A stretch of 63,634 bases of DNA, the filler included, from Octopus bimaculoides (Eukaryota): NCBI RefSeq assembly GCF_001194135.2. It is 6 parts of 6 records of this genome, joined end to end, with 100 filler letters (N's around TTAATTAATTAA, not from the genome) between each part and the next. Parts side by side here need not be neighbours in the genome. Positions count along the whole stretch, not along the records: positions 1 to 30,225 come from NC_069000.1; 5 more parts are not named here. One strand, written 5' to 3'. The position numbers and the translations under genes were made by a program. The notes beneath the pieces are model-generated. The model searched no databases. It saw only the letters and a list, made by a program, of their open reading frames with translations, and had not been told where the DNA came from. Shown here one piece after another: positions 320-21,774 of the stretch. How positions within the stretch are numbered: position 1 is the stretch's first letter; every line of letters starts with the position of its first letter.

Positions 320-430
320 GAAAGATAATTGCATGTTTTGAAAGTTAACTTGTGGATTACACAAGCAATAATGTACATAAATAATAATTAACCAGTTTTT
401 GATCTATCAATGTACATATACATACATACA

Positions 431-465
<35 letters not shown>

Positions 466-2600: not shown

Positions 2601-3145
2601 ATCATCATCATCTTTATCATCATTGTTTAACATCTGTTTTCCATGCTGGCATGGGTTGGACGGTTCAACTGGAGTCTGGGAAGCCAGGAGGCCGCAGCAG
2701 GCCCCAGTCTGATCTGGCAGTGTTTCTACAGCTGGATGCCCTTCCTAACACCAACCACTCCGAAAGTGTAGTGGGTGCTTTTTACGTGCCACCGGCACAG
2801 GGGCCAGAGGAGCTGGCATTGACCACGATTGGATGGTGGTTTTTACATGTCACCGGCACAGAAGCCAGTCAAAGCAACACTGGCATCGGCCACGTTCGGA
2901 TGGTGCTTTTTACATGCTACCGGCACGCGGCTCACAACTACAATTTCCATGTGATTTAATTTTGATATCGCTGTTGATGTTGATGTTGATGTACTTGACT
3001 CAATAGGTCTCCTCAAGCACGGCATGTCGCCCTATGATCCAAGGTACTTTTGAGTGGGCTGGTTATGCGACACTGGTGTAGGTTACAGCTGTGGATTCAC
3101 TTTATTTGCCTGGTCTTCTCAGTCAAAGCATACCTCCAGAGGTCT
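2601..3145 (-). mobile_element. RTE LINE 3'UTR fragment, CpG-decayed
   Basis: (ATC)n, then TTTCCATGCTGGCATGGGTTGGAC...CAGCTGGATGCCCTTCCTAACACCAACCACTC: the reverse complement of the family 3' end, with internal repeat units. Confidence 0.8.
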
Positions 3146-3559
3146 AAAAGATAAAAGAAGAAATAATTATACAGAATAAATAAACAAGTTTAATAAAACA
3201 CAAGGTAATTAAAACAAGATACATAAGATTTAAAAGTTCATTGCACTGATCTGATTACAAATCTGACAGTCCACCAAGTCTGGTATGAAAATTGACACCC
3301 CACCTTCTTTTGGCAGGGAAGGGAGACTTCTCTTTCTCTGCTAGTGGATATGGTAAAACAGGTTATGTGGAGGATTCAGATAAAAGGTTTGAAGACTGGT
3401 ATTTTCTTTTGTTACCTAGCTCCCATTATCTTCCCCAAGTGCCTAATTGACGAGGCAGTGAAGAGAGAGAGAGAGAGAAAGGTGTGGTATTCTATTATGT
3501 TTATTGGAATATGAATAAGAGTGGCGAGACTGGCGAAGCTGAAAAGGTCTGGCCTGACT

Positions 3560-4700
3560 GATTTTCTAAGTAGAAGGAAAGAGTACTTTTGATGCCTTGG
3601 ATATGGCAGAAGTTAACTCATTTGATCGGTGTCCTTTCGCCAGAAATAATGATGGCGGTCAGGGACTTGATTATGGTCCCACCAGGTTCAGTATCTTACA
3701 ACACTTTTCAGAGGGAACTCATTAAGAGGACCTCTGACTCTGAACAATGGCTACTACACCAGCTTTTGATATCCCAAAAGTTGGGAGATAAAACTCCGTC
3801 ACAGCTCTTGTGACAGATGAAGCAACTTCTGGGGGATCATACTTTACCAGATGATATATTTAAACAACCTTTCCTCAAGTGTCTGCCTTCCAACACACAG
3901 ATCCTACTGACATCTTACCAAGGAATCAGCCTCTATCAATGAACTGGCCAAGGTGGCAGACAGAATCACTGAGGCAGCTAACCCATTTTCAACTATGGCC
4001 AAGGTAACACCTTCTACAAATCCTTTCGCTGTTTCCTCAGATTTCTCCTCTGACTCCCTTTCGCCAGTTATGCCACTTCCTCAGCTTATTTAACTTCTAT
4101 CGTTGATTCATTCTTCACTGTGCTGGACTCCTGTCTCCACTCACCGAGCTTCTCAAGAACCGATGTAAGAAGAATGAAACCATTTTGCTGACTCCTACTC
4201 AAACCAAAGCTTTCAGCGCTGTGAAACACTCTCTCTACAGCATCCCTCCTTGCACACTGTGTCTCTGATGCAAAGCTTTCACTTGTGGTTGATGCATCAG
4301 ACACTGCAATAGGTGCTGTTTTACAGTCCTTTCATCAGCAACACTTGCAAACGTCTTGCCTCCCCTGGACTCACTCAAGACATCTCTCAAATTTGCCATG
4401 AGCAAATTCCATATTCACCTGTGCCAACCTTTGCAGATACTGTGTGATGTCTCAACAGTTTTGCCTCATCTCTTCGTCCCACTGATTCATTGAAGACCTG
4501 TCTTTGAAGTTCTGCTTACTCTATCATCTCAGCTGCCCAACATTGATGGTGCATATCCTCATTCATGCACCTTTCGTCATCTCCATTTCACCAGATACAC
4601 ACACACTTCCATTACATCTACTTCAATCTCGTCGGACCCTGGCCCGTCAGTCTCAGATACACTTTCATTTTCACTCACTGTCCTGATACCATGTTGCTAA
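3560..4700 (+). mobile_element. Degenerate Ty3/Gypsy LTR retrotransposon remnant (gag, RT/RNase H junction and integrase N-terminal pieces)
   Basis: Gag-like LSPEIMMAVRDLIMVPP..YNTFQRELIKRTSDSEQ..LHQLL..LGDKTPSQLL (3589-3813). AFSAVKH..LSLVVDASDTAIGAVLQ at ~4209-4326. CDVSTVLPHLFVP..RPVF at 4443 onward. Stops, frameshifts and large deletions are present. Confidence 0.8.
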
Positions 4701-5613
4701 TTCATATCTCTTACTCTGTAGCATGAGCCTTGGTATCGGGCTGGTTATCATGCTATGGACCTCTTACACACACTGCTCCACACACATCATGTCCATTGGC
4801 CCAAGAGACTATGTAAGGCTCTATATATATGAACTGGCCCTAAATGCCTCTCATTTTCTCATTTGCGTGTACTTGCCTTTTCTTGCATCTGTTATATTCT
4901 TTCTCTTGATGCATTCATGTTTTTTCCATTGTTTGAACATTTTGCATTGCATTTATGCATGTTTATTTTCACTTTCCAGGACCCTTTTCTCCTTGTTCAT
5001 ATGTTTTAACTGTATTATATTTTGTTTGCAAAAATTTCTTTTTTCAAACATATACCTGCATGATTACACTGTCACATTCATGCACTACACCATGCCTTTC
5101 TTGCTTCTTTCTCATGCTCTCTGTGCCCTTGTAGACATGACTTACCTCTATTGGACCCTTCATCTGTCACATATTTTATGCAGGGAGTTGTTTGTCTTTT
5201 ACAACATGCCAGCATGCTAACTTTCACTGCTGCTCATTTCAAGGCATTTAACATCTCATGCACCATCTGGCATATTCAGCATTGCCTCAGTCACTGGTAT
5301 ATTCAGCACTGTATTTGTAATCACTGCACTAGCGTACTGCCTCAGCCTTGCATCACATCCATCCACACTGATATGTTACACAATTCTGAACATTGATTTT
5401 TCACTTTGGTCCTGAAATGTTGCATTTTTTCCATTTCTGCTTCATCAGTTTTTAACATATATTCATTTGTTTCTGTATAACTGTATATAATTTTTTTTTT
5501 TTTGCATTTTCTTTGTACATGCGGCTGCATAGGTCCTATGTTTTGTGAGAACTTTGTCCTTTGCTCATATTTCTTTCCTAGATCATTCATTTCTTTTTCT
5601 TAGAAACTCTCTT

Positions 5614-5640
5614 GTGGGGAGTAATGTAGAGACCTTGCTT
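5614..5640 (+). other. Possible polypurine tract / 3' LTR start of the Gypsy remnant
   Basis: GGGGAGTAA-TGTAGAG resembles a PPT followed by TG. No matching 5' LTR was identified by eye. Confidence 0.3.
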
Positions 5641-7044
5641 GGCCCTACCTGAGTTTCGAAGCTGAATCAGTAAATTTCTCCTTAACTATACAGCCTTATT
5701 GTTCTGTCAAGGGATAACATCATTTCGTTCAACCTATAGCCTTGCCAACATTTGATTGATGCATTTTCCTCTTGACCCATAACCCTTCTAGGCTACAAAA
5801 AGTTTAAATAGATAAAGTAAGTTAACCCACAGGAGACTAGTCACAGTTACAACGGTATACCTCTTTTTCTAGCTAGTCTGCATACTTATAAATACAAGCA
5901 GTTCCAGGCAGACCAGACAGAGGGAGAGAGAAAGCAATCCTGTGTGGCAAGTGACAGCTATGATATTTCACCATACATCTTCCCTCTCCTGTCTCTCACT
6001 TGTTGTTCACTAGCACCATTCTAACAAACATCACTCTGTTTATCTCATTCCTGCTGCTGTAACAACAAGAATATGTAAACTTAACATCATACACTCTCAG
6101 ACAAGAAAAGACAACTCACTTTTACCTGATTTATTTTATATACACCCAGTCGTCAAGGTTAGGAAATGATGATGTGTAATGGAGAAATAAATATGTTATT
6201 TACAACTTCGGCTACTGTCTTTCTTTTGCTGGAATCAACATCACCATCTTTGCTTTCAGCATAGACAATAACCGTTACATTCCGGTAACCACTCCATTAC
6301 ATGGTGAATAAGAGTGATGATGTTCTGAGGAAAATTCTAGAATTTGACAAGGGGAAACTAGCTCAGTCCAGAGTCTATAATGGGTAAGTTCCAGAAACCT
6401 TTAGCCTGGCAGTGTTACCATGGAGCACAACTAATTCAAGATAAACTTTACAGGCACAGAAGTGCCACTGGTCAGAATTGCCTGAGATACATGTAGAGTG
6501 ACAAAATCTCTATATACACTCATGTAGTGTCTGAGCATTACTGATCTATGAAGTTATATTGAACAGCTGTCGTTGAGTGAAGGACAAATCCAGTTAACAA
6601 GCAAATCTACCAAAAGGATTAGCCTATCACCTGCCTTTCACAATGCCAGACAGGTAGTATTTCTCCGTGTAGTGGTTATGGTAAAAGAGCTTGTGTAGTG
6701 GACAAAGCTGAAGGGATTGAATTCAGACACCTCTTTAGTCAAGCCCTTATTAACTTTCTCAAGTTCCAATCAGAAAAGAAAGTGTGGATAAAGAGGGAAG
6801 TGCTCTCAACCAGCGAATTTGTCAAAAGGTGAGAAACGGAGGCAAAAACGGTTAGGGTGAATGGAACTATTCTAAAGATGTGCCTGTAGCTTGAAGAACA
6901 ACAGTTAGGTGAGGGCTCATTACTCTAATGGTCAGAGTGATCCTGGATTCTCAGGGTTCCTTGATTGGCTCTTGTTGGAAGCTTTCCTGTATCAGAAGAA
7001 CTGCATCATCTATTTATTCACATAATTTTTGTACAATCTTTTAT

Positions 7045-7204
7045 CTTTTATCGTTCACTTGTTTCAGTCATTAGACTGTGGCCATGCTGGGGTACCACCT
7101 TGAAGAATTTTTAGTTGAATGAATCGACCCTAGTACTTACTTCATTTTAAAGTCTGCTACTTATTCTATAAGTCTCTTTTGCCAAACTGTTAAGTTATGA
7201 GGAT

Positions 7205-7241
<37 letters not shown>

Positions 7242-7402
7242 AATACAATAGGATTCTTTTCAGTTTCTGTCTATCAGATCCATTCACGAGGCTTTGTTTG
7301 ACTTGAGGCAATAGTAGAAGACACTTGCCCAAGGGGTCACGCAGTTGGACTGAACTCAGGACCTTGTGGTTGGGAAGTAAGTTTCTTACCACACAGCCAC
7401 CT
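7045..7402 (-). mobile_element. tRNA-derived SINE family 'S2' with internal (CA)n
   Basis: Reverse strand reads GGTGGCTGTGTGGTAAGAAACTTACTTCCCAACCACAAGGTCCTGAGTTCAGTCC (A/B-box-like), then a central domain, a microsatellite and a 3' part shared with 12238-12645. Confidence 0.75.
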
Positions 7403-7544
7403 TTATCGCTTCCTCCTCAGCTCTTTTATGTAAACCCTCCCCACCACCACATACATGATTTGTAAACTGTCCTTGTAATGTGCTCCATCAAACACCCCTT
7501 TGGAAAATAAAAGAAACAACAACAACAACAACAATAATAATAAT

Positions 7545-8015
7545 TATACTTGTTATTTTATTGTCTTTGCACAGCTTCTAATGCTGGAGATGTACTACGG
7601 TGCCAGCTGTTCACTACCAGTGAACTAAGGTAACACCCCTTATTTTTTGAGCACCATCTGGAGTATTCAAGCGGTTCCAAGCAGTGCTGTTTTCTGCAAG
7701 TGTGCCACCCTTATTGCAGACCCTATTTGTTCCATGTACTCCTCAAGATTTTTACTCACTGTTCCCAGGGCCCCGACAGTTATTGGTACAACTACCACCT
7801 TTTTCAGCGACCACAACTGCTTAACCTCCCAAGCTAACCTATCAGATCTATCGACTTTTCTTTCTTCCTTATCGCATACCTTGTTGTCAGCTGGGCATGC
7901 TATGTCTATGATCCAGCATCGTTTGCTTTCTTTCTCAATTAACACTATGTCTGATTTCCTATTCTCTATCTCATGGCCGCACTGAATCATAAAATCTCGT
8001 AGGATCTTTGCATTA
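7545..8015 (-). mobile_element. R4/Dong-like non-LTR retrotransposon 3' fragment A (restriction-like endonuclease C-terminus + 3'UTR)
   Basis: NAKILRDFMIQCGHEIENRKSDIVLIEKESKRCWIIDIACPAD..KEERK..VVVPITVGALG..LQKTALLGTA matches the PD..D..K RLE domain of R4-clade elements. Confidence 0.8.
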
Positions 8016-8024
8016 TATGCATTA

Positions 8025-8420
8025 CTTATTATTTTTATTATTATTATTACTCAGAAGTCTTATTATTATAATGTGCTTTCAGTGCACTACCGAGTGCAGC
8101 TCTGTGTGCCTTGGGTATGTGCTGTGGTTTGCTGTGATGCTCTTATAATTACTGTATTGAAAGTGTTTTATGTAGGATGCATGTGGTGCCTAGCAGTGCT
8201 ATTTTCTGTATGTTATATATATTTGTAAGTCCTGATATTTTTGTTATGTATTTGTCTGAATATTTTTTTTATTATACCTAAGGCACCTACTATGATAGGA
8301 ATTGTTTCTGTTTTTAGACTCCACATATGAGTTACCTCTATTTCCAGGTCTTCGTATTTTGAAAGTTTCTCCATTTCTTTTAGAGAAACGACGTTGTCAT
8401 CTGTTGGTATTGATACATCA
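8025..8420 (-). mobile_element. R4/Dong-like non-LTR retrotransposon 3' fragment B with (TAA)n tail
   Basis: Hand translation: DVSIPTDDNVVSLKEMEKLSKYEDLEIEVTHMWSLKTETIPIIVGALGIIKK(fs)YSDKYITKISGLTNIYNIQKIALLGTTCILHKTLSIQ*. A short 3'UTR follows, then TAA repeats at ~8025-8050. Confidence 0.8.

Positions 8421-8480
<60 letters not shown>
8421..8480. repeat. (ATT)n microsatellite
   Basis: About 20 uninterrupted units between R4 fragment B and an S3 SINE. Confidence 0.95.
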
Positions 8481-8482
8481 CT

Positions 8483-8820
8483 TTAAGGCAACAAGCTGGC
8501 AGAATTTCATCTGTCTCTGTGTTCTGGGTTCAAATTCCACCAAGGTCGACTTTATTTTTTATCCTTTAAGGGGTCAATGCAATTGACTAGCCCTGTCCTC
8601 CAAAATTTCAGGTCTTGTACCTATAACAGATAAAATTATTACACTGGGCAGCAAAAAAAATTTGAAACCATTACTATTATTGTTTTTATGCCACCAAGAT
8701 CGACTTTGCCTTTCATCCTTTCAAGGTTGACAAAAAAAAGCATCAGTTGAGCACTAAGGCCAATGTAATCAACTAATTTCTCTCATATTGTGCCTATATT
8801 AGAAAGGATTATTATTGTTG
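8483..8820 (+). mobile_element. Tandem S3 SINE fragments
   Basis: AAGGCAACAAGCTGGCAGAAT..GGGTTCAAATTCCACCAAGGTCGACTTT head, a second central-domain copy at ~8695, and ATT tails. Confidence 0.7.
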
Positions 8821-9564
8821 TTATCTTCTTCTTCTTCTTCTTCCTCCTCCTCCTGTCGTTGTTGTTTTCACCAATATCAGCAACGCAACTGCTCTATGTA
8901 GCAGACCAAATCTCGTCTGGGAAACTTCTCTATCATTTTCAAGATATATTTTAGGGATTTTTTTTTTTCTACCCAAAGACACCAGAATGCCGGAATGGCC
9001 TTCTTACAAATCACTTAGTTTCCATTTTACAAATACCACACCAAGCCCCAGGCATTCTATGGTTTCTACTTTGATGTTTAAACAGTCAATAACATTACTC
9101 ACTATTTATTGATCAATAGTAAACCTCAGCCAATGAGGAAGAACCTACAAGGCCCCTTGCCCTACAAGAACCTCAAATCATTCCTTACCCTTTAAAAATA
9201 CGGTTTTGGATATACACGAAAAGCAAGGATGATCGAATTTGGAATACCTTAGATCATAAGTTTGCCAGATCAGAGCTGATTTGGAGGTAAACAACTACAG
9301 CAACAATTTGATCAAAGAGATCTCATATAACAGTAATTGTTCGTAAATTTTCATTGTTTTTTTTTTCCTAAAAGATAATCCTCATGATGGCATGATATTA
9401 GAAGATAAAATAACTGCTGTTAATCCAGGATTAGTTCAACTGGATCTAAATTCCGTAATACTTGTTTATATTGATGGTTACTAATTTATTTTGGAATTAC
9501 CTGTTATGAGTGGAATTTAATTAAATCTATCAGAAAGAGACAATGAGGAAGCTTTTATATAGTC

Positions 9565-9770
9565 ACTTAACCTGCTAAAAATAGCAGGCAAATTCTCTTC
9601 AATCAGCACTGTAATGTCTTCAAGTAAGAAAAGTAAATTGGATAATGTAGTCCTAGATACACTATGTCTGAATAAAAGATTGGATGATCAAGGCTGGAAA
9701 GCTTTGATTATTGACTTCCTCAGTCAAGGTTGGCCTGTGGTTAAATAACATCACCACCATGAACCACAGT
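9565..9770 (+). mobile_element. Dispersed repeat family 'S5' (retroposon 3' end with (CAA)n-like tail); further copies ~32960-33130 (-), 34780-34985 (+), 41930-42300 (+), 49060-49260 (+)
   Basis: Shared motifs AACCTGCTAGAAATAGCAGC, TTGGATAATGTAGTCCTAGATACAC, GATGGTCATGGCTGGAA, GACCTGGGGCTAAACAAC. Confidence 0.6.
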
Positions 9771-10305
9771 AAGGGAGCCACTACATCATTATTCAAAATC
9801 ATCTAAATTACTTATCCACATCGTCCTCAGTATGTCATCCCTATGTCAACCCAATCTCAGTTAAGTTATTGCTACAGTGTCACTCAGCTTCAGCTATGTC
9901 ACTCCTATATTGTCACTCAACCTAAATAAGTCACCACTAGATCATCACTCAACTGATGAGCCCAGTAAAGGACCATTAGTACTGATTCATCAAATTAAAA
10001 ATTCTTTTAAAAATAATAAGAAAAATTTATTCTATTTTGTGAACTTTATTAGTAAAAATCAATTTAAGTCAGACTATCTTGCAAAGGCAGTGCTCCAGCA
10101 TGACCTTTGCTGGAATAGCTAAAACAAAAGTATTTAGATTTCACTTGCTATTGTTAGTAATCTTTTTACTACATTTTTTCTTATTTGCCTGACCTGAGTT
10201 GTTGTTTAGCTCCAAGTCGTCTCTAATTAAGCAAACTTATTATCAAAACTGGTCCAACTTTTTCCTATTGTACAAGGAACCTAAGACCACATTAATCAAA
10301 GTAGC

Positions 10306-10306
<1 letters not shown>

Positions 10307-10338
<32 letters not shown>

Positions 10339-10375
10339 CATCCATCTATCTATCTATCTATCTATCCATCTATCC

Positions 10376-10410
<35 letters not shown>

Positions 10411-10520
10411 CATCTATCTATCTATCTATCTATCCATCTATCTATCTATCTATCTATCTGCCGGCCTGTCTGTCTGTCTGTCTATATATATCTATCTATC
10501 TGTCTATCTGTCTGTCTGTC
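10307..10520. repeat. (CTAT)n/(CTGT)n tetranucleotide microsatellite
   Basis: Direct inspection. Confidence 0.95.
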
Positions 10521-10959
10521 TAACTGTCTATTTTTTGTTCGTTTATCTGTATATCTATTTCTGCTTGTTATCAATAAAGGGTTTCTTTAAGTTTATGTGT
10601 CCATAGTGAAGACTAAACCTTTTAGTCTTATCATCGAGTCAGTCTGATAGACTTTTACTCTTGACTCTCCTATTAGCATTCATTTTAGAGTGTACAGAAA
10701 TCTGTTATATATATATATATATATATATNNNNNNNNNNNNNNNNNNNNNNNNNNNNNNNNNNNNNNNNNNNTATATATGTATGTATGTATATAAATTTGT
10801 ATTAAAATAATTTCTACCAGCACAAAAGTATTTTGGTGTGCATTTGCAGTTCCGACCCGAGATTTAAGCCACTGGAACTTTTTCACAATATGAATATTTT
10901 CTCAGTTTGTCATCACTGGTGATGGAGTCAAGATGTGAACCATCCATTCTATGGTTATA

Positions 10960-11215
10960 CATCCTAAAGTCTAGGATGGTCCATGTAAAAAGCACTTGTG
11001 CTGGTGTCACATAAAGGTGCTCATCCCAGTGGCACATTAAAAGCACCCCAGCACACAAGGTTGAGTGATTGGCATTGGGAAGGGCATCCAGCTATAGAAA
11101 GCAAGCCAAATCAGACTGGAACCTGGTGCAGCTCTCTAGCTTGCCAGTTCTGGTCAAACCATCCAACCCATGCCAGTGTGGAAAACACACATTAAAGGAT
11201 GATGGTGATGATGAT
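10960..11215 (+). mobile_element. RTE-family 3' end, CpG-decayed
   Basis: AAGGGCATCCAGCTATAGAAA..CCATCCAACCCATGCCAGTGTGGAAAAC..GATGATGGTGATG. Confidence 0.7.
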
Positions 11216-12079
11216 AAAGCAGTCAAGTAGTGTCTTTGAGCATTATTAATGAAGGAATGCCCCTGCTGGTAGAGCCATATTTTGAAGTTATTTTCAGTAA
11301 ATCTGATGTAGGACTTCAGTGAAGAGTTGTCTCTTAAGTGACTCTTTAATGCAATAAACTATAGATTAACTCAAGTAGACAGTTACAGTTAATTGCAGTA
11401 TTTAGATTTCACTTGTTATTGTTAGTAATCTTTTTATTGCTATCGTTTATTAACACAAGCTGACAAGTTCTTATTGGTAGACAGAAACTATATAGGAGTC
11501 TGTTGCATCCATCCATCTTGTTGCATTTGTCCATCTGTCCATCCATCCAGATATATATATATATAGAAAGAGAGATGTGTTTATGTGTGTGTGTGTGTGT
11601 GTTGGAAATAACATGAAACTCTGAGTAACAGCTTTTCTTCTAGCTGTAGCTTACTCATTTAAAGGGGATCTTTGTCTCATGGGCTACATGGGGATTTCAC
11701 TGGTGTTAGTGCAATGTTAAATTTACCCAGTACACTCTGTAAAGTGGTTGGTATTAGAAACAATGCCAAAGCAGATATTGGAATATGATGCAGTCCTCTG
11801 ACCAGTTGAATCTTGCCTACAAGGCGCTCATGTACTGGTAATATTTCCTTAGTTCACTTTGAATTTAACTTATTTTGGATCACCTTAAAAACATTGAGTT
11901 AACTTGTATTTTCGGAAATATTAATTTCAACAATATTTTCAATATCTAAATATGCTAATATAATAGAAACAATTGTCGGTTTTATAAGGTGAATTCTAAA
12001 ATAAAGATGTGATTTTCTCTATACGTATTTTTGTTGTCAAACACTCTGAATTTCTCAAAATTCTTCTAAATGATATTAG

Positions 12080-12137
12080 GATCTACTTGTCACACATGAG
12101 GAATTACCTGGGGTGTGTATTCTACTTACATTTACTG
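12080..12137 (+). CDS. Candidate upstream (signal-peptide-like) exon of the Ig gene
   Basis: TAG|GAT CTA..GAA TTA CCT GGG GTG TGT ATT CTA CTT ACA TTT ACT G|GTATCT gives ..LPGVCILLTFT ending in phase 1, as the next exon requires. The donor is weak and there is no in-frame ATG (ATG at 12096 is one base out of frame). Confidence 0.3.
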
Positions 12138-12237
12138 GTATCTGATTGTTGGATATATTCAACCAAATTTATTTAAGACCGAATGCTTTATTGGTATCTG
12201 CCTGGATTTTTTAATCCCTTTTTTCCTTCTGCATATA

Positions 12238-12645
12238 CTCTTTATTCTTTTACTTGTTTCATTCATTTGACTGTGGCCATGCTGGAGCACTGCCTTTAGT
12301 CAAGCAAATCAACCCCAGGACTTATTCTTTGTAAGCCTAGTACTTATTCTATTGGTCACTTTTGCCAAACCGCTAAGTTACAGGGATGTAAACACACCAG
12401 CATCAGTTGTCAAGCGAAGTTGGCAAGACAAACACAGACACACAAACATATACATACATATATATATATATATATATACAATGGGCTTCTTTCAGTTTCC
12501 GTCTACCAAATCCACTCACAAGGCTTTGATCGGCCCGAGGCTATAGTAGAAGACACTTGCCCAAGGTGCAATGCAGTGGGACTGAACCTAGAACCATGTG
12601 GTTGGTAAGCAAGCTACTTACCACACAGCTACTCCTGCATCTATA
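12238..12645 (-). mobile_element. Full-length S2 tRNA-derived SINE with internal (TA/CA)n
   Basis: Reverse strand GCAGGAGTAGCTGTGTGGTAAGTAGCTTGCTTACCAACCACATGGTTCTAGGTTCAGTCCCACTG (A and B boxes), then a central domain and a 3' end. Confidence 0.8.
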
Positions 12646-12731
12646 TTTATATATACCTTCAAAACCTTTTGACCAACTCACAGCTTCTCTCTCTACTTCA
12701 TCTGTTATATAATTCCATCTTCTTTTTTCAG

Positions 12732-12898
12732 AATCTGTTGACATTGTAATATCTCCTGGTGAAGTAATAGCCGGAGGAAAAGAAAAAGTGAAGATCACAT
12801 GTATAGACAAAAAGTACGCCAAAAAAGTATATGCCATAACTATTTCTAAAGATGGTAGAGATATTGTTACCATTGAACCTCCAAAGAAAGCAATCTGG
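12732..12898 (+). CDS. Ig-domain protein, coding exon A (strands A-C', first Cys)
   Basis: TTTTTTCAG| acceptor, phase 1. (E)SVDIVISPGEVIAGGKEKVKITCIDKKYAKKVYAITISKDGRDIVTIEPPKKAIW |GTAATT, phase 0. Not reported in the + strand ORF track. Confidence 0.8.
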
Positions 12899-13371
12899 GT
12901 AATTATATTTATCAATTAATCAAATATAACTGTTGAGCTCTCTCTCTCTCTATCTATCTATCTGTGTAATTGTATATACGTTTATATTTTTTTTGTTCCT
13001 TTGTCGCTCTTACTATTTTCTAGTGTTTTTTCTCTCTCTGTTCTCTACTTATCTCCTCTTTATTCTCCTGGCCACTGTCAGGAAAATGCAATTAATAAAA
13101 TTTATAAAATAAGAAATGTTCCCTACTCAAAAACTTAGAACTTCCCTCTAATCACAACATATATCTTATTTTACTATGATTAATATAACTTTTGAGAGGC
13201 ACTTTCTGTAAAGGTAAAGGTTAATGACCCAGTGATGGATAATTCTGCTTAGAAGTTGTTGATCAATTGACTCTAATTATCTCAACCTGGCTGAAATAGA
13301 TATTGATTTAATTATTGATTGATTGATGACATTGTTGTTGATGATGTTATATATTTCTAATTATTATTTAG

Positions 13372-13549
13372 GTGGATAATGATATATCAAGAAGAGCTTA
13401 CCTAATCAACACCTACATCAGTGCTGGTAATTCAATTGCTACCTTATATGTGACCATCCCTCGTGGCTGGGACACTGGCCTATACAGGTGTACTGTTCAG
13501 AAGACACCACGTCCAGAAACTTCCAGACCAATGGCACTGAAAGTCAATG
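13372..13549 (+). CDS. Ig-domain protein, coding exon B (strands D-G, DxGxYxC)
   Basis: TTTAG| phase 0. VDNDISRRAYLINTYISAGNSIATLYVTIPRGWDTGLYRCTVQKTPRPETSRPMALKVN G|GTAAGT, phase 1. Canonical DTGLYRC motif. Confidence 0.85.
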
Positions 13550-13725
13550 GTAAGTAGACACTAATACAGAATAAATGGTATATTCTCTATGTAAAGAGAA
13601 CAGATATTTCCTAAATAATTAATTATTTAAGAAATATCAGATTAATTATTTTAACACCATCAAGTATCAGATTAAATGAAATACAGAGTTCAACATAGCC
13701 TGGCTAATTTAAACTAATCAAAATT

Positions 13726-13978
13726 GCACCCACTACACTCTCGGAGTGGTTGGCGTTAGGAAGGGCATCCAGCTTTAGAAACTCTGCCAAATCAGATTGG
13801 NNNNNNNNNNTAGGAAGGGCATCCAGCTTTAGAAACTCTGCCAAATCAGATTGGAACCTGCTGTAGCCACCTGGTCCACCAGTCCTCAGTCAAATTGTCC
13901 AACCCATGCTAGCATGGAAAGCGTACGTTAAACGATGATGATGATGACGATGATGATGATGATGATGATGACGACGAC
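13726..13978 (+). mobile_element. Intronic RTE 3' end with (GAT/GAC)n tail; contains a 10-N gap with duplicated overlap
   Basis: Family 3' end sequence. TAGGAAGGGCATCCAGCTTTAGAAACTCTGCCAAATCAGATTGG appears on both sides of 13801-13810. Confidence 0.8.
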
Positions 13979-14158
13979 TATTTAAATTTACCAGATTTGC
14001 ATTACATTAGGAATACCTATTGTAAAATGAAAAAATAAAAATAAAAATGCTGCATCTCTTGATGTAGTGTGAACATAATGATTACTAGGTATGAGACACA
14101 AATTAGAAATAACAGTTTGTATTTTCAAAATGATAAAGACAAATAAAAATTTTTGCAG

Positions 14159-14238
14159 GATCCAGTCTACCTCGAATGGATATGATGTTGGTACTTTTAG
14201 TTGCTGCAAATATGGTATATTCTGTAATGCAAAGTTAA
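14159..14238 (+). CDS. Ig-domain protein, last coding exon: GPI-anchor-like C-terminal signal
   Basis: TTTTTGCAG| phase 1. (G)SSLPRMDMMLVLLVAANMVYSVMQS*: small residues, a spacer and a hydrophobic tail with no cytoplasmic domain. Strong donor GTAAGT at 14243. Confidence 0.7.
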
Positions 14239-14332
14239 ATATGTAAGTTTGAGAGTTTTTGTTTTGTTTTTAATTCTTTAAAATTTTAAATTTATTTTAT
14301 TATATACTTCTGTTAGATATTGCCTCTTTCAG

Positions 14333-14600
14333 ATGAATTTACTTAAGTTAGACATACTGAAATCCTCGAATTCACCTTTTGAACAGATATATATATTGAG
14401 TATAGTATTCACTTTTGTTATTGTTGTTTTAAAATTGTTGCTGTTATGAGGCAATGCTGAAAAGTTCTTGGCTTTAAGGGTATCATGAAAGTTTCTGGTT
14501 GGAGACCCAACCTTCAGATTTCTTTTATAGGGCTTAGAAAAACTGAAGAACAACTGCAATAAGTGTATGGATCTGAGAGGGGAATATGTTGAATAAAATC
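14333..14600 (+). other. Probable 3'UTR exon of the Ig gene
   Basis: 90-nt GTAAGT..CTCTTTCAG intron (14243-14332). AATAAA at 14592-14597. The end coordinate is a guess. Confidence 0.5.
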
Positions 14601-15515
14601 ATAATTAACTCATCCTCCTGTATTTTCATTAATCCAAAGTCAGGAACTTAGCATCCCCTTATACAATTGTTTTTATTGTTAAGTTTTTCTGCTCAGGTTG
14701 ATAGATGAAGGCAGATAATTAAAGAATAACTCACTAAACATTTTCCCATTAGAATAAGGTATATTGTCCTTACAGTTCAAACTTAAATACATAAAAGATT
14801 AGTAAGTTCACTGTGAAAGGTTTAGCAGTACAAAGGTGATCAGTTTGAGTGATAATGTAGATTTCTTGTTGGCTCATCAATACCACACTTAAATGAATGA
14901 AATAAATACCAAACTGTTATGTCTTAACGCTACTGCTATCTAGCACCTTCGGATGATCTCTACTCAATAGTTTCATTGATCAAGCAAATTAAACATTGAT
15001 TTGTCAAAACAAATGTGAGGTATATCATTATATTTTTGTATTAGCTTTTACTATCCCAAGCCAGTTGAAAAGATGAAATTAATAGTCTGTGTAAACTCAT
15101 ATTAAACCACATTTATTAAATATTTGCAATTTATTCTTTTAAAAAGTTATTAAAATAATTCCTTACTATTATATATTTTTGTTTTATTTATTACAGTTTT
15201 CTTTCAACATCATTAACGAGACTGATTAGCTCCAGGGGATCTAAACAATGAAATTAAAACACTCCAACATACATGCAAATGTACACAGAATACAAATAAA
15301 ATCCATTGACAAACTATTAAACGTTCCTGACAGCAAAATCTAATCATCTGTCTGTTGATAGCATTTTTGCTACATAATGCTATATTGTTCAGCTGGGATT
15401 GTAGATTGGAATACCAGAGAAGAATTTGAATGAAAGAAAAGAGTAAAAGTAGGCTTTGTGTATTGCTGTCATCAGCACCAATTAGCTCTTTGCCTGTTGT
15501 GATAATAATAATAAT

Positions 15516-15553
<38 letters not shown>

Positions 15554-15678
15554 ACTTTAGAGCAATTATTAACAGTCAGTTGTTAAATTGTTTCAATGGC
15601 TTGTGAAACACAACACTAGCTCAGTTACATCTTAAAAATTCTTTAATACCTCGGTTATAGCAATTTGCTTTTGTTGAT

Positions 15679-15711
<33 letters not shown>

Positions 15712-16346
15712 ATATGTATGTATATATNNNNNNNNNNNNNNNNNNNNNNNNNNNNNNNNNNNNNNNNNNNNNNNNNNNNNNNNNNNNNNNNNNNNNNNNN
15801 NNNNNNNNNNNNNNNNNNNNNNNNNNNNNNNNNNNNNNNNNNNNNNNNNNNNNNNNNNNNNNNNNNNNNNNNNNNNNNNNNNNNNNNNNNNNNNNNNNNN
15901 NNNNNNNNNNNNNNNNNNNNNNNNNNNNNNNNNNNNNNNNNNNNNNNNNNNNNNNNNNNNNNNNNNNNNNNNNNNNNNNNNNNNNNNNNNNNNNNNNNNN
16001 NNNNNNNNNNNNNNNNNNNNNNNNNNNNNNNNNNNNNNNNNNNNNNNNNNNNNNNNNNNNNNNNNNNNNNNNNNNNNNNNNNNNNNNNNNNNNNNNNNNN
16101 NNNNNNNNNNNNNNNNNNNNNNNNNNNNNNNNNNNNNNNNNNNNNNNNNNNNNNNNNNNNNNNNNNNNNNNNNNNNNNNNNNNNNNNNNNNNNNNNNNNN
16201 NNNNNNNNNNNNNNNNNNNTATTTCTTTTGTGTCTATTTAATGTCACCGAAAACAATTTCAGTTACGGTCACAGGACAAGACAAATGTTTAGGTTATTTT
16301 TCAACACAACTTCAATGTAAAAACGTTTTGTGAACAGAAAACACAG

Positions 16347-16396
<50 letters not shown>

Positions 16397-17171
16397 GCAC
16401 ATATACATGTGTGCATGTATACATTATCATTTTGTTTTTATGTTCACTTTCCATGCTAGAATGAGTTCGACAGATCAACAGGATCTAAAAGGTTTCAGTT
16501 TTGGCTTGGTTTCTATGATTGACTGTCTTTCCTAATACCAACTACTTTACAGAGTGTACTAGGTGTATTCTTTATAGCACCAGCATTATAGAAGTTGTCT
16601 TGCCTTCAGCAAGACTAAAGAGTTTTCTCAGCCCTGTGTTGTCTCTGTTCAGCTCACAAAGCAGTTTATAAAGTATATTGGGTGCTTTTCTTCATGCCAC
16701 CAGGATCAGTGAGGTCACTTTGTAGCTTACAAGGTCAAACAGCCTCCAAGATTGAAAGAGGGGATAGGGGAGAGAGTGATAACTCTAAGCGAGATGTTGA
16801 GAGAAACTACAGGAATGAATTTATTGTTGTGAGAAGGGAGTTGTGGAGGGATTAAAAAAAAAGACAGTGTTGCAGAATAATAACGAAAAGAACAGAAGGG
16901 AAGGAAAGAATAGTGTAGGGTTTAGTGTGAAAGACAGAAGATGATGAGTAGGAAGGACCCACTGCTATTACAAGTTATACATGTTATCACCATACGTTCA
17001 CACATACATAAAACACAAGACCATCTGGTTTTTAAGATGAACAATTTCACCTTCAGGTTGCTTAAAAGATCATTAAGTATTAACATATGTGTATTAGAGG
17101 AACACAATGTTTTTAAATGTTTCTGCTAAGACTAATAATCTTAGAAAAAGTTAATCAGCTTATGCATATAC

Positions 17172-17218
<47 letters not shown>

Positions 17219-17223
17219 TTCCG

Positions 17224-17254
<31 letters not shown>

Positions 17255-17477
17255 CTGTATATATAAAGGTATCGTTTACATATGTTGCTTATCTTATCTG
17301 AGGTTACATAAAATTATGTGAAATTAATAATTCATGTGGTACTTTATAGCAATAAGTAGAATCATAAACAAACAAAAGATATTTTCTCAATAAATGAATA
17401 TATAATCTCATCAAAAACTAGGTTTCTTATATAATCTCATAAAATATTTAGGTTTCAGATCTAATCTTATAACTCAG

Positions 17478-17720
17478 ACACAGATATAGCTGTGTGGTTA
17501 GAGAGATTGCTTTGTCAACACATGATTTGGTGTTCAATCCCACTGTGCAGCACATTGGGCAAATGTTCTTTTCTGCTTCTTTTGAATAAACCAAAATCTT
17601 ATGAAAGTAGTAGATGTGATTGCTAACTAAGATGTTTACTTTGAAACATGGTCTTGGATTTGATCCCATTGCACAGTGCTTTGAACAAATGTCTGCTAAT
17701 ATAGCCTCTGACTGACCAAA
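17478..17720 (+). mobile_element. Degenerate S2 SINE heads
   Basis: TAGCTGTGTGGTTAGAGAG..GTGTTCAATCCCACTGTGCAGCACATTGGGCAAATG, then a second GATTTGATCCCATTGCACAGTGCTTTGAACAAATG. Confidence 0.5.
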
Positions 17721-20024
17721 TCTTTATGAATTAAATTTGGTACCTGGAAACATTGTGGAAACTCATCAGCAGGGCCATTGTTGTCTTTGAATGGCAGATT
17801 TAATTGTGTATGATATGTTATGGCACAACCGTTTTGGCACTGCCTAATTGAAAGTTGAACATTAATGATTATATTGAATTTAAAATCAGACATGCCAATG
17901 ACACCAGATCTTTCTGCTCAATTTCCAATGCAAGGTTACATAGAAGGGATCCATTTACCCTATTTCTGTAGCAAAATGGCCAGCAGGGATCTATTTGGAT
18001 ACTGTGAATCACCCCTTCTTGCTACAGCCAAAGCTACCTAAATACAAAATTAACTTTCCACTGCTATATCTACACCTAGTCTTCAATGTTTCCAAAATAT
18101 ATCAACCTATCAAGTCACACAGCACAGCACTCACAAAACTTCCCATGCTGCCTCTGAACAGTCCATCACTATTCTTCCTCACTTATTGCCAAATCACCAT
18201 TAAAGAGACAGGAATTTCTGGAATTCATTATGAATCTAAACACATTTTTCTTGACAGTGATGAACTTTCAACTAAATTTTGTCTTTTCAAAAGGAAAGAC
18301 TTCAAAATTGACAAGACAATACCAAACTGCATAAACGTGCATATTACTTTATGTAAGAAGTTCTACAACCTCTCCATAGCAGTAGTATTATTTTGCAACT
18401 GGTTGAAATTTGTAAATTTGCATTTAGAGTTTGTCTACAATTTCTCTTAAGCATTTTCAACATAACACAAGGGTTACTTTTCTCCATACATTCCAGCCTA
18501 TGTTTAAGGTAAAATTCAAATACTATAATTATGGCTCCAATTTGCTTGATTCCACTGCATGGCATCATGGGAAAGTGTCTTCTGCCATAGCCTTGAGTTG
18601 ACCAATGCTTTGTGAGTGAAATTTAGTTGACAAAAACTGTGCAGAAGCCTGTCAGGTATGTATGTTTTTTTTCTTTGGGATTTATTTTAAGTTTATTCCT
18701 TCGCAGAATTCAAGTCAGTCACTAACAAACTGACAAGGCTCTTTTGTTTAAAATCAAGACAGCTCTTGGGGTTGGTGGATATCTGAATTGGTTGGTATGT
18801 GCATGTATGTGTGTATTTGGATAAAGTTGCACTAATGTAGAGTGTGCATATCACTTTAGAACATAGGCATTATCTTTTATCTTTTACTTGTTTCAGTGAT
18901 GTGTCAGAATGGTAACTGAGTCAAATGATAAAATAAATGCCAGACTAAAATAAGTGCTAGAATTACTATGAACGCAGTAAAATCCCTGAATGTAGTGCTC
19001 TAGCTTGGCCACAGCCCAATAAGTGGAACCAGTGAAATAAAAGAATAAAAATTCAAGAAATATGTATAAAAACATGCTGATGGGTGAGAAATGTCTATAT
19101 TTTCACTGTTTGAAAACTCGGTCACTGAATATTGTCTAACAGTTGCATAGTCTACAAAGAACCATTTACTATCATCATCATCATTGCCACTGCCAACATT
19201 TGCCTCTTTATAGATATTTGCATGGGCTAGTACCCTCTACATTAAAGTTTTTGAGAAATTACTAAAGAAAGTAAGGACTTATGTAACAAAATTATCTTGG
19301 ACTTTGGTGCATCATCAGACATATTCTTACTCATTGATAACACAATGTTTTATTCATATATTTTAATCCTTACACAAAATTTTCTTTTGAAAATGGATTT
19401 AAAATATAACTTTTGTATTTGGTTTAAATATTTTATTTCTAAGAAATATAATTTCACTAAACACTAGTGTCTCCTTGACATTTGCTGTTCTTTTGAGAGC
19501 TTATGATGCCCTAAGGAAATGCTGCTGCCCAGGTTGTGAGCAACTGTGTTAGAAAAACAAATAAAAAAAGGAAATAAAATGGAAATGAAAAAAAAAAATG
19601 TATGATGTTGATATGATTTGTCTTGTTCAGTTTTTATAAGAAGGAATGGAGATCAAACATAAAATATTCAGTGAAACAACACTTGGCAAAGACTTAACAT
19701 ATGACAAGAAACATTTCCAGGGAAAACACCAGCAGCCAGCAAAGATGTCTTGACTTCAAGCTAATGAAGGTTAATTTGGAAAGCGAAACAAAAAAAAAAA
19801 AAAACTTATTCAATACTGATGCTATTATTGGATTAGAATTAAATCAGGAACTGCCTTTGTTCCAATTTTAAATACTAGTAGAAATATATTTCAGTCTGAA
19901 AGAATACACTGGGAAATTCAGTTGTAGCTGACTGCTGGTGCTACTGGTGGTGATGGTGGCAAGATAGCCAAGTGAGTAAGTGACATATACACATCTTCAG
20001 GAGATTTTAACATATATTCAGCCA

Positions 20025-20101
20025 TTACTCCCCTGGCTTGTTCACATGCTGCGGTTTTTCACGTAATGGCACTGGACGACGAAACAGCAATACATGAGGT
20101 T
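20025..20101 (-). CDS. CKS1: Cyclin-dependent kinase regulatory subunit Cks1, last coding exon
   Basis: TTTCCATAG|AA CCT CAT GTA: (E)PHVLLFRRPVPLREKPQHVNKPGE*, the conserved EPHILLFRRP motif. Confidence 0.96.
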
Positions 20102-21292
20102 CTATGGAAATATAACAGTAAAGAAAATTATTAAATGAACACACATGCATTATTAGCATACATATACAAACATACATCCACCCACATATGTATATGAGTA
20201 CCTTTTTTTAAATATCAATCTCACTTTTAACAAAATTATTTTCCTAGACCATTTACACTCAGTGGAAACTGATGAGCAAAAGGGGACATGCCATGGATTA
20301 GATATAGGCAATAATAATGTCATAAATTGGAAATCCCACAGCAATATACAATTGTCAACCTAAAAGTGTTTAAAATGTTGAGATTTATGAATCACTAGTT
20401 TCACAATGTAAAAGTAATTGGACTATCAAGGATAGCTGCAGTGAGGCTAAAATTATCTAGCAAAGTAGGGCGGGTGCTATTCAACTGCATTGTCAGTTAC
20501 ACAAAACTACTATTAGACCACCTCCTGATTTATGATCAGACTACTGTCTTGTTTAATCAGTTATCCCAAAAACAAGAATTATCTGCTGTGCTGACGTCTC
20601 AAAACAGCTCATCTAAGACTTACATTAGCGTGATGCTCACATCAGCAGAACAGTGCTACTGCTGCAGCACACATACACACTAAGAGCATAGATCACATTC
20701 AAAAGAAAACCATATCAATATGCTTCAATCCCTAGTTCACATGCTGCATCATTTTACTCCCTCTTCTACCACTATTACAGTGGCCTCTACTCTTCCAAAC
20801 TAGCTAGTTGTACACTCTCACACACTCATCTTTCTATCACCTCCCTCTCTCAAGACCACTTGACCTATATGTCACTCATCCTCTTGTCACCTCCTTGATC
20901 CATACTAAATATTTATTCAATCCATAATTCTCAGAACTGCAACCACTGGGATTCTGCCCTTGCCTACACTATAACCCTCAACCTACATGTATCTAAACTG
21001 AATACATTCAACTGATTTCACCTGTCTAAGAAGGCTAACAAGGGCTATGGGCACCACACTTTCTCCTTTCACTAACCCACAATTTTAATAATAAAAAAAA
21101 AAAAAAAGAACCAGTCAGTTGATTAAATAATTAAATTAGATACTTAATTGAGATGAACAATAAATCTTAATGGTAATCAACATATAAGATATCTTCTGAC
21201 TAACACAGTAATTGTTTGTAGTATAAAGTAAATAGCTAAATTATTAAAGGAGGAAATAAGGAGTATGAAATTTTGAAGACAGTAACACAAAC

Positions 21293-21420
21293 CTGGAGAA
21301 TGCACCATGTAATGAATCCAACCTGGAGATTGCTGCACTCCAAGGTTACGCCATTCAGTCTCTGTCATTAAGTGGTTTTTGGGCACAAGTTTTGCAATAT
21401 CACTGGGTAAGATTACATGT
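21293..21420 (-). CDS. CKS1: Cks1, middle coding exon (128 bp)
   Basis: TTTTTCAG| (R)[42 protein letters not shown](E) |GT. Phases 2/1 match the neighbouring exons. Confidence 0.98.
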
Positions 21421-21774
21421 CTGAAAAAAGGGGAAGAAGAATTAAAAGTGGGTTGTATTGTTATACAGTATACATCATCACCATCATCATCATCATCATT
21501 GTTTTCATTGCCCCCTTTTCTATGCTTGCATGGGTTAGAGTTTACTGAAGCAGATTTTCTACAGCCAGACTCACCTTTCTGTCACCAACCCATATCGGTT
21601 TTCCAGAATTCTGGAAATGAAGGAATGTTTGTGTGACAATGATACTTATTTACAACCATCATGTGTATGTCTGTGTGTTTTTTTTATCTGTTACTAGTTT
21701 CAATCATTAGACTGCGGCCATGCTAAGGCACCAGCCTTGGAGAATTTTCTAGTTGACTGAATTGACCCAAGTAC

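What the first reader, a model, noticed from the sequence alone, without database searches (positions are those of the whole stretch)
12732..14238. Unrecognised small Ig-superfamily gene: one Trp-less V-type domain with a GPI-anchor-like tail
Seen: three exons with canonical splice sites and compatible phases (1-0-1) join into a 141-aa frame ESVDIVISPG..KITC..YAITISKDG..RRAYL..ATLYVTIP..DTGLYRCTV..ALKVN-GSSLPRMDMMLVLLVAANMVYSVMQS*. Known: the 72-residue Cys-Cys spacing and DxGxYxC fit a V-set Ig fold, but Ile sits where the C-strand Trp is expected. A small-residue/spacer/hydrophobic end without a cytoplasmic tail is the GPI-signal pattern. Inference: a Thy-1-sized surface recognition or adhesion molecule, perhaps related to atypical molluscan IgSF domains. 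I cannot name an orthologue, and the ORF track shows only the middle exon.
Basis: partly seen in the sequence, partly recalled or inferred. Interest (0 to 1): 0.78.

Follow-up and report, generated by a model that had tools for sequence, protein, structure and literature searches.

The report
Annotated octopus small Ig-domain gene
The three exons are real and are the last three exons of a four-exon Octopus bimaculoides gene (LOC106881629) that is already annotated but uncharacterised; it encodes a 159-residue secreted protein with one immunoglobulin-like domain and a tail that looks like a GPI-anchor signal, so it is a conserved cephalopod gene but not an unrecognised one.

Summary
That protein is 100% identical to residues 19-159 of RefSeq XP_014787579.1 (O. 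bimaculoides LOC106881629; UniProt A0A0L8FRF4, "Ig-like domain-containing protein"). So the gene is already annotated, though I found no paper on it.

The only missing part is an 18-residue signal-peptide exon, 9.7 kb upstream of the window. It is therefore not the tail of a multi-Ig protein.

Orthologues exist in O. sinensis/vulgaris and Argonauta hians (dN/dS 0.07). A 45-50% identical homologue sits on an intronless metatranscriptome contig.

The N gap (13801-13810) lies in intron 3, inside a SINE, and is flanked by an exact 44-nt duplicate. It is a collapsed contig overlap and does not affect the reading frame.

Ig-likeness is consistent but weak. Pfam hits are below threshold, AlphaFold pLDDT is 50 or lower, and every distant library hit is a multi-Ig protein. 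The canonical Cys pair and DxGxYxC motif are conserved, and an invariant Ile sits at the Trp position.

The GPI-type tail is conserved by inspection. Function remains unknown, and interest is low to moderate.

The parts
12732..12898 (+). It enters in phase 1 and ends in phase 0, and encodes (E)SVDIVISPG...KKAIW: Ig strands A to C'/C'', including Cys24 and the invariant Ile36.
   Evidence: Splice sites and translation. 100% identical to XP_014787579.1. Same boundaries in O. sinensis, Argonauta and L004.
12899..13371 (+). Intron 2 (473 nt, GT...AG).
   Evidence: The O. sinensis intron is 2953 nt, and its ends align at 92-97%.
13372..13549 (+). Coding exon 3 (phase 0 in, phase 1 out). It encodes VDNDISRRAYL...ALKVN(G): Ig strands D to G, with PRGWDTGLYRC.
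13550..14158 (+). Intron 3 (609 nt as assembled). It contains a lineage-specific SINE plus a (GAT)n insertion at about 13725-13976.
   Evidence: O. sinensis intron 3 is 380 nt and aligns only to window 13550-13724 and 13977-14158.
13757..13854 (.). Assembly gap (Ns at 13801-13810) flanked by an exact 44-nt duplicate (13757-13800 = 13811-13854). This is a collapsed contig overlap inside the intronic SINE.
   Evidence: One search shows the duplicate. One search shows that the joined version aligns gap-free to other SINE copies. One search shows the same N run in assembly GCA_001194135.2.
14159..14238 (+). Coding part of exon 4. It encodes (G)SSLPRMDMMLVLLVAANMVYSVMQS plus TAA: the candidate GPI attachment signal (omega region NGS / spacer / 16-residue hydrophobic end).
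   Evidence: Conserved in all four full-length homologues.
14239..14919 (+). Probable 3' UTR (inferred). AATAAA occurs at 14592 and 14901.
   Evidence: A 94% identity block with O. sinensis runs on past the stop codon to 14919. No transcript data were available.
3350..3386 (+). Alternative first exon of RefSeq isoform X2 (XP_052831136.1): ATG...MVKQVMWRIQIK plus G, donor GT at 3387. It has no signal peptide and lies beside retroelement fragments, so it is probably a by-product start site.

Best explanation
The span holds exons 2-4 of a four-exon protein-coding gene, Octopus bimaculoides LOC106881629.

The 159-aa precursor has three parts:
- An 18-residue signal peptide, encoded about 9.7 kb upstream of the window.
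- One basic (pI about 9.5) Ig-like domain of about 115 residues and V-type length. It has the canonical B-F disulphide pair and a DxGxYxC F strand, but an invariant Ile where the C-strand Trp normally sits.
- A C-terminal propeptide: small residues N-G-S-S, a 6-7 residue polar spacer, then a 16-residue hydrophobic end.

Most likely mechanism (inferred): the protein enters the ER, and GPI transamidase cleaves it at the N133/G134 region. It is then displayed as a lipid-anchored, single-Ig-domain glycoprotein on the outer leaflet of the plasma membrane. There it would act through extracellular protein-protein binding (cis or trans recognition), in the manner of Thy-1.

Shown: the gene structure, its identity, its conservation under purifying selection, and a full-length mRNA of the same architecture in a relative.

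Inferred: the Ig fold (good odds), the GPI anchoring (moderate odds), and any recognition or adhesion role (speculative).
For: Gene model:
- Canonical splice sites and phases.
- 100% identity to XP_014787579.1 residues 19-159.
- The window is 100% identical to CM046620.1 of GCA_001194135.2, with exon 1 at L005 3001-3055.

Conservation:
- Orthologues are 93% (O. sinensis) and 84% (Argonauta hians) identical, with identical intron positions.
- dN/dS is 0.07 against Argonauta.
- The window is collinear with the O. sinensis locus.

Transcript-level support in a relative:
- P0011 (164 aa, 45-50% identical) is encoded without introns on a 1203-nt JGI metatranscriptome contig. That contig has a 5' UTR carrying in-frame stops and a 3' UTR with AATAAA, and its ORF runs across all three junction positions.

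Ig-likeness:
- Four Pfam Ig families match at E 0.002-0.15 in 3 of 5 family members.
- In an exhaustive profile search of 1.84 billion proteins, all five distant hits (E 1e-15 to 3e-4) are multi-Ig proteins, and the matches fall on strands E-F-G.
- hhalign against 21 V-set domains gives a local P of 3.7e-4. The global alignment places Ile36 on the Trp column.
- A PDB profile search is topped by CEACAM1, PECAM1, CD226 and VH domains.
- The top 50 Foldseek hits of the AF2 model are all VH or nanobody domains.
- UniProt names the protein as Ig-like.

GPI-type tail:
- KVN-GS(S/N)-xPRxD-(16 hydrophobic residues)-1 to 4 residues is conserved in all four full-length sequences. Only 1-4 residues follow the hydrophobic run, and its mean Kyte-Doolittle value is about 2.0.
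Against:
- All Pfam Ig scores are below gathering thresholds (best 17.3 bits against 30), and P0011 alone matches nothing.
- AlphaFold confidence is poor (mean pLDDT 44.6 and 50.0, pTM 0.32 and 0.43), and no G strand was modelled.
- Foldseek E-values are only about 1e-2 with TM 0.3-0.4, and the PDB is rich in antibodies.
- The PDB sequence hits also include non-Ig neuropilin b1 domains at similar E-values.
- The canonical C-strand Trp is absent.
- No GPI predictor was available. A 16-19 residue hydrophobic end could also act as a short transmembrane anchor.
- dN/dS against the closest species is 0.47, although it is based on only 17 substitutions.
- No expression or functional data were found.
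Confidence: 0.65

Rival explanations
1. Same gene and same Ig-like ectodomain, but the C-terminal hydrophobic segment is a true transmembrane helix. That would make it a type I membrane protein with essentially no cytoplasmic tail, not a cleaved GPI signal.
For: AF2 models residues 121-140 as one continuous helix. From D140 to the C-terminus there are 19 residues. The distant homologue ends in ARRHS, a short basic stop-transfer-like end.
Against: The uncharged run is only 16 residues and contains Asn or His in its middle. It is followed by 1-4 residues in every homologue. It is preceded by a conserved N-G-S-(S/N) small-residue cluster and a Pro/Arg/Asp spacer, which is the classic GPI-signal layout.
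Confidence: 0.2
2. The domain is a beta-rich fold that is not a true immunoglobulin-superfamily member. In that case the Cys spacing and the DxGxYxC-like motif are convergent.
For: All Pfam Ig matches are below threshold. The N-terminal half gives no significant profile alignment to Ig domains. The structure models have low confidence. The C-strand Trp is missing.
Against: All five distant hits in an unbiased 1.84-billion-protein search are multi-Ig proteins. Four different Ig Pfam models are the only Pfam matches. The strand order in the model and the Foldseek hits are V-domain-like.
Confidence: 0.1
3. The three exons are the 3' end of a larger multi-Ig gene whose upstream exons lie outside the finding's span.
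For: The window lacks the first coding exon, and intron 1 is long: about 22 kb here and 39 kb in O. sinensis.
Against: Independent gene models in three species give 159 aa with only a signal-peptide exon upstream. The metatranscriptome mRNA of the homologue has in-frame stop codons just upstream of its ATG and encodes 164 aa. No other Ig-like exon was found in the 12.7 kb upstream within the window.
Confidence: 0.02
4. Chance ORFs or a dead pseudogene, with no functional product.
Against: dN/dS is 0.07 over dS 1.23. The frame is intact and the splice sites are conserved in at least four genomes. A homologue is seen as an expressed mRNA.
Confidence: 0.01

Closest known systems
Octopus bimaculoides LOC106881629 (XP_014787579.1; UniProt A0A0L8FRF4, "Ig-like domain-containing protein") and its orthologues O. 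sinensis/vulgaris LOC118766974 and Argonauta hians Ahia01_000465400
   Same: This is the gene itself: 100% identity over the 141 residues encoded in the window. The orthologues are 93% and 84% identical with the same four-exon structure.
   Different: Nothing differs. The public records carry no function beyond "uncharacterized" or "Ig-like". Isoform X2 and the O. vulgaris model use other, probably spurious, end exons.
Thy-1 / CD90 (vertebrate GPI-anchored single V-type Ig domain glycoprotein)
   Same: Overall design and size: a signal peptide, one V-length Ig-like domain of about 111-115 residues, a C-terminal GPI-type signal and no cytoplasmic part. The Thy-1 description is from PMC6497726 (abstract) and general knowledge.
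   Different: No detectable sequence relationship. No Thy-1 sequence appeared in any search. The resemblance is in how it is built, not in membership or orthology.
[quoted passage not shown]
   Same: A small cephalopod glycoprotein reported as Thy-1-like. The title is confirmed. That it is lipid-anchored and Ig-related is my recollection only.
   Different: Not testable here. This is a lead, not a result.
GPI-linked multi-Ig adhesion molecules (CEACAM family members, IgLON/OBCAM)
   Same: The best PDB sequence matches fall on their E-F-G strands: CEACAM1 at E 0.02 and OBCAM at E 0.75. They are IgSF surface recognition proteins, some of them GPI-anchored (general knowledge).
   Different: Those have two or more Ig domains and clear Pfam membership. 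This protein has one domain, sub-threshold scores and no Trp in strand C.

Membership tests
Immunoglobulin superfamily, V-type domain | Two Cys (strands B and F) about 65-75 residues apart | tested here: met
   Cys24 and Cys96 are 72 residues apart and are invariant in all homologues that cover them.
Immunoglobulin superfamily, V-type domain | D-x-G-x-Y-x-C motif entering strand F | tested here: met
   DTGLYRC in the octopods and DSGLWKC in P0011.
Immunoglobulin superfamily, V-type domain | Invariant Trp in strand C, about 12-16 residues after the first Cys | tested here: not met
   Ile36 (Cys+12) is invariant in all six sequences. A global hhalign to 21 V-set domains places it on the Trp column.
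Immunoglobulin superfamily, V-type domain | Score above the curated Pfam threshold for an Ig family model | tested here: not met
   Ig_3 scores 17.3 bits against 30, ig 15.5 against 21.8, Ig_2 14.2 against 27, and V-set 12.7 against 26. The best E-value among family members is 0.0019.
Immunoglobulin superfamily, V-type domain | Significant remote homology to bona fide Ig domains | tested here: met
   In the profile search of 1.84 billion proteins, the distant hits P0005, P0007, P0008, P0009 and P0010 (E 1e-15 to 3e-4) are all multi-Ig proteins by Pfam. Caveat: the scores sum over repeated domains and cover only strands E-G. hhalign gives a local P of 3.7e-4.
Immunoglobulin superfamily, V-type domain | Two-sheet beta-sandwich fold | tested here: inconclusive
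   AF2 mean pLDDT is 44.6 and 50.0. Strands A, B, C, C', D, E and F are modelled, but G is not. The Foldseek top 50 are all V domains, but at E about 1e-2 and TM 0.3-0.4.
GPI-anchored protein | N-terminal signal peptide | tested here: met
   Exon 1 encodes MEIFRFGVFVTVLCAYLV in the RefSeq protein and the orthologues. It lies outside the window. It was judged by inspection; no SignalP was available.
GPI-anchored protein | Omega site with small residues at omega and omega+2, a polar spacer of 5-10 residues, and a 12-20 residue hydrophobic C-terminus with no cytoplasmic tail | tested here: met
   N133-G-S-S / LPRMD / MMLVLLVAANMVYSVM-QS. The same layout is present in O. sinensis, Argonauta and P0011. 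This was inspection only.
GPI-anchored protein | Positive call by a trained predictor, or biochemical release by PI-PLC | not testable with these tools
Thy-1 (CD90) orthologue group | Detectable sequence similarity to vertebrate Thy-1 | tested here: not met
   No Thy-1 appeared among the hits of any protein search.

The most novel reading that the evidence does not exclude
This small family may be the gene behind the Thy-1-like, lipid-anchored brain glycoprotein purified from squid in 1988 (Sgp-1). That would make it a coleoid-cephalopod-specific neuronal surface protein that arrived at, or kept, the Thy-1 design (one Trp-less V-type domain on a GPI anchor), and it would link an old biochemical observation to a genome locus.
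Probability: 0.12. Interest if true: 0.45.

Novelty: already known. Interest (0 to 1): 0.2.

Why it matters
As a gene discovery it does not matter, because the exact protein already has RefSeq and UniProt accessions with an Ig-like label. What remains of modest interest is biological.

It is a single-copy gene under purifying selection. It appears restricted to cephalopods, and no relative was detectable elsewhere among billions of proteins. Its design mirrors Thy-1: a signal peptide, one atypical Ig domain and a probable GPI anchor.

Cephalopods are known for lineage-specific surface-molecule repertoires in the nervous system. A small orphan IgSF surface protein is therefore a reasonable candidate marker or recognition molecule to look up in existing octopus cell atlases.

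Tried and rejected

2. Search for the signal-peptide exon inside the window: regex and tblastn found nothing credible. This is explained by its position 9.7 kb upstream of base 1.

3. O. vulgaris model P0003: its odd N-terminus maps to window 11230-11310 at 74% identity but has no ATG there, and its C-terminus is a different end. I treated it as a mis-model.

4. P0004 (481 aa, E 6e-21): this is a tandem-repeat ORF from an SRA-derived catalogue that shares NGSSLPQMDM with exon 4, nine times over. I judged it a short chance word amplified by repetition, not a relative.

5. Two AlphaFold runs, with 3-sequence and 6-sequence alignments, stayed at low confidence. I did not pad the alignment with generic Ig domains, because that would have been circular.

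6. Two scans of metagenome contigs found no further homologues. The third protein search added none either.

7. Literature: there are no papers on the LOC, XP or UniProt identifiers, and nothing specific on cephalopod GPI-anchored IgSF proteins. The 1988 squid Sgp-1 paper is not held.

8. Paralogues in the window: none.

Full report
**Where the window comes from.** The window is AT-rich, repeat-laden animal DNA. It is 100% identical to Octopus bimaculoides assembly GCA_001194135.2, record CM046620.1. Window base 1 corresponds to base 12693 of locus L005, at about position 17,444,850 of the record. It is also collinear with the orthologous O. sinensis locus over window 321-19183.

**The observation.**
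- 12732-12898 follows ttttttcAG and precedes GTaatt.
- 13372-13549 follows tatttAG and precedes GTaagt.
- 14159-14238 follows ttttgcAG and ends in TAA.
- The lengths are 167, 178 and 80 nt, which gives phases 1-0-1.
- Cys24 and Cys96 are 72 residues apart, and D90-x-G-x-Y-x-C96 is present.

**The assembly gap.** The Ns at 13801-13810 lie in intron 3.
- O. sinensis has a 380-nt intron here. It aligns only to window 13550-13724 and 13977-14158, so the stretch in between is a lineage-specific insertion.
- That insertion is a SINE followed by (GAT)n. Other copies of the SINE lie at window 148-319, 2601-2778 and 11063-11215.
- The 44 bases to the left of the Ns are repeated exactly to the right: 13757-13800 equals 13811-13854.
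- Removing the Ns and one duplicate gives a SINE copy that aligns across the junction without gaps to other copies in the window and in O. sinensis.
- The gap is therefore a collapsed overlap of two contig ends. The two sides are continuous, and the coding frame is untouched.
- The same N run is still present in the chromosome-level assembly.

**Identity of the gene.** A search of 5.8 billion proteins returned three octopod proteins:
- O. sinensis "uncharacterized protein LOC118766974" (159 aa, 93% identity);
- Argonauta hians Ahia01_000465400 (159 aa, 84% identity);
- a 153-aa O. vulgaris model.

The 90% cluster of the first also contains O. bimaculoides XP_014787579.1 (LOC106881629 isoform X1; UniProt A0A0L8FRF4, "Ig-like domain-containing protein"). 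Its residues 19-159 are identical to the window's product. I found no paper that mentions any of these identifiers.

**The missing 5' end.** All full-length models add only MEIFRFGVFVTVLCAYLV plus one G. This is a typical signal peptide, encoded on a separate exon that ends TTGGTTG|gtaag.
- In O. bimaculoides this exon is at L005 3001-3055. That is 9.7 kb upstream of window base 1 and beyond a 1.7-kb N run.
- In O. sinensis, intron 1 is 39 kb.
- This explains why no such exon could be found inside the window.
- RefSeq isoform X2 starts instead with MVKQVMWRIQIK, encoded at window 3350-3386 with a GT donor. It lies next to retroelement fragments (DUF7041 at 3574-3810, RT RNase H at 4225-4398) and has no signal peptide. 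I regard it as a by-product transcript start.

**Is it a real, constrained gene?** Yes.
- Splice-site positions and phases are the same in O. sinensis, Argonauta and a more distant genomic contig, L004.
- Against Argonauta, dS is 1.23 and dN is 0.086, so dN/dS is 0.07.
- Against O. sinensis the ratio is 0.47, but this rests on only 17 substitutions.
- A 164-aa homologue, P0011, is 45-50% identical. It is encoded without interruption on a 1203-nt JGI metatranscriptome contig that has in-frame stops upstream of the ATG and a 600-nt 3' UTR ending near AATAAA.
- That contig is a spliced mRNA of the same architecture: signal peptide, domain and hydrophobic tail. It rules out the "tail of a multi-Ig protein" alternative for the family.
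- The source organisms of P0011 and of the ENA contig carrying P0006 are not labelled. I presume they are other cephalopods, which is an inference.

**Family size.** Three word-indexed searches and one exhaustive profile search of 1.84 billion representatives found no further relatives. Two scans of JGI metagenome contigs also found none. There is no paralogue in the window. As far as can be detected, this is a single-copy family restricted to cephalopods.

**Is the domain an immunoglobulin domain?** The evidence all points the same way, but none of it is strong.
- The only Pfam matches are four Ig models (Ig_3, ig, Ig_2, V-set), and all are below their curated thresholds. The best is 17.3 bits against 30, and the best E-value among family members is 0.0019.
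- A profile search of PDB sequences is led by CEACAM1, PECAM1, CD226 and antibody VH domains at E 0.02-0.6. Neuropilin b1 domains appear at similar E-values.
- In the exhaustive library search, the five distant hits (E 1e-15 to 3e-4) are all multi-Ig proteins by Pfam, matched on strands E-F-G.
- hhalign of the family against 21 V-set domains cut from one of those hits gives a local P of 3.7e-4 over the E-F region. In global mode it places the invariant Ile36 on the Trp column.
- AlphaFold2 gave poor confidence with the 3-sequence and 6-sequence alignments (pLDDT 44.6 and 50.0). The better model has strands at the expected A, B, C, C', D, E and F positions and a C-terminal helix.
- The top 50 Foldseek matches of that model in the PDB are all VH or nanobody domains, but at E about 1e-2 and TM 0.3-0.4.

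I put the Ig assignment at about 0.85.

**The C-terminus.** All four full-length sequences share the same layout:
- KVN-G-S-(S/N), which is also the only N-glycosylation sequon;
- a Pro/Arg/Asp-containing spacer of 6-7 residues;
- a 16-residue uncharged run (mean Kyte-Doolittle about 2) that contains Asn or His;
- 1-4 final residues.

This is the textbook GPI-attachment signal, with omega at N133 or G134. It is short for a membrane-spanning helix. No trained predictor was available, so this remains an inference from inspection. I give GPI anchoring about 0.65 and a tail-less type I membrane anchor about 0.2.

**Mechanism and comparison.** The most likely product is a basic (pI 9.5), 12.8-kDa single-Ig-domain glycoprotein held on the cell surface by a lipid anchor. 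It would act by extracellular binding.
- In build and size it works like Thy-1/CD90, but no sequence relationship to Thy-1 was detected in any search. It is not a Thy-1 family member.
- A 1988 paper reported squid brain glycoproteins with similarities to Thy-1 and Ly-6. The citation is confirmed, but the text is not available. Whether Sgp-1 belongs to this family could not be tested and is offered only as a lead.

**Verdict.** Nothing here is surprising for a specialist beyond a tidy, lineage-restricted, Thy-1-like orphan. Interest is 0.2.

Noticed in passing
window 20025-20102 and 21294-21425, minus strand: Two coding exons of a CKS gene (cyclin-dependent kinase regulatory subunit; Pfam PF01111, E 1e-21). 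It is convergent with the Ig-like gene, and its stop codon lies 5.8 kb downstream of it. Argonauta hians has the same neighbour, so local synteny is conserved. The first CKS exon was not located.
   Followed up: partly
window 3350-3386 (+), with 3574-3810 and 4225-4398: The alternative first exon of RefSeq isoform X2 (MVKQVMWRIQIK, no signal peptide) lies beside retroelement remnants (DUF7041 and the RT RNase H-like domain). It is probably a transposon-associated start site rather than a productive isoform.
   Followed up: partly
window 12230-12655 (also 7042-7400): A roughly 400-nt interspersed repeat ends 77 nt upstream of the exon-2 acceptor. At least eight copies at 80-89% identity are scattered through the O. 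sinensis locus, and a 68%-identical copy lies at window 7042-7400.
   Followed up: no
window 148-319, 2601-2778, 11063-11215, 13726-13958: Copies of one SINE family of about 175 nt (core ...GGAAGGGCATCCAGC...). The copy in intron 3 carries the assembly gap and is absent from the O. sinensis intron.
   Followed up: yes
window 11230-11310 (+): This stretch is 74% identical to the odd N-terminus (MSLSIIDEGMPLLVEPCFEVIF) of the O. vulgaris gene model P0003, but it has no ATG here. The O. vulgaris model looks mis-predicted at both ends.
   Followed up: partly
L003 (JGI metatranscriptome 3300018952, contig Ga0192852_10068746) and L004 (ENA ERZ21867824, ctg113718l): These carry the only distant homologues of the family, at 45-50% identity. 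They come from unlabelled environmental or unknown assemblies. They carry an extra Cys-Cys pair (E/P-CCGK) that the octopod proteins lack. The source organisms were not identified.
   Followed up: no
P0004 (SRR5665811-derived, 481 aa): A tandem-repeat ORF that contains NGSSLPQMDM, identical to the start of exon 4's product in Argonauta, nine times. I judged it a chance 10-mer amplified by repetition. It could instead be a satellite derived from this exon.
   Followed up: no
window 10729-10771, 15728-16219, 22537-22581, 27699-28086: Further N runs (assembly gaps) in the piece. The window itself begins immediately after a 1.7-kb N run of the chromosome record.
   Followed up: no
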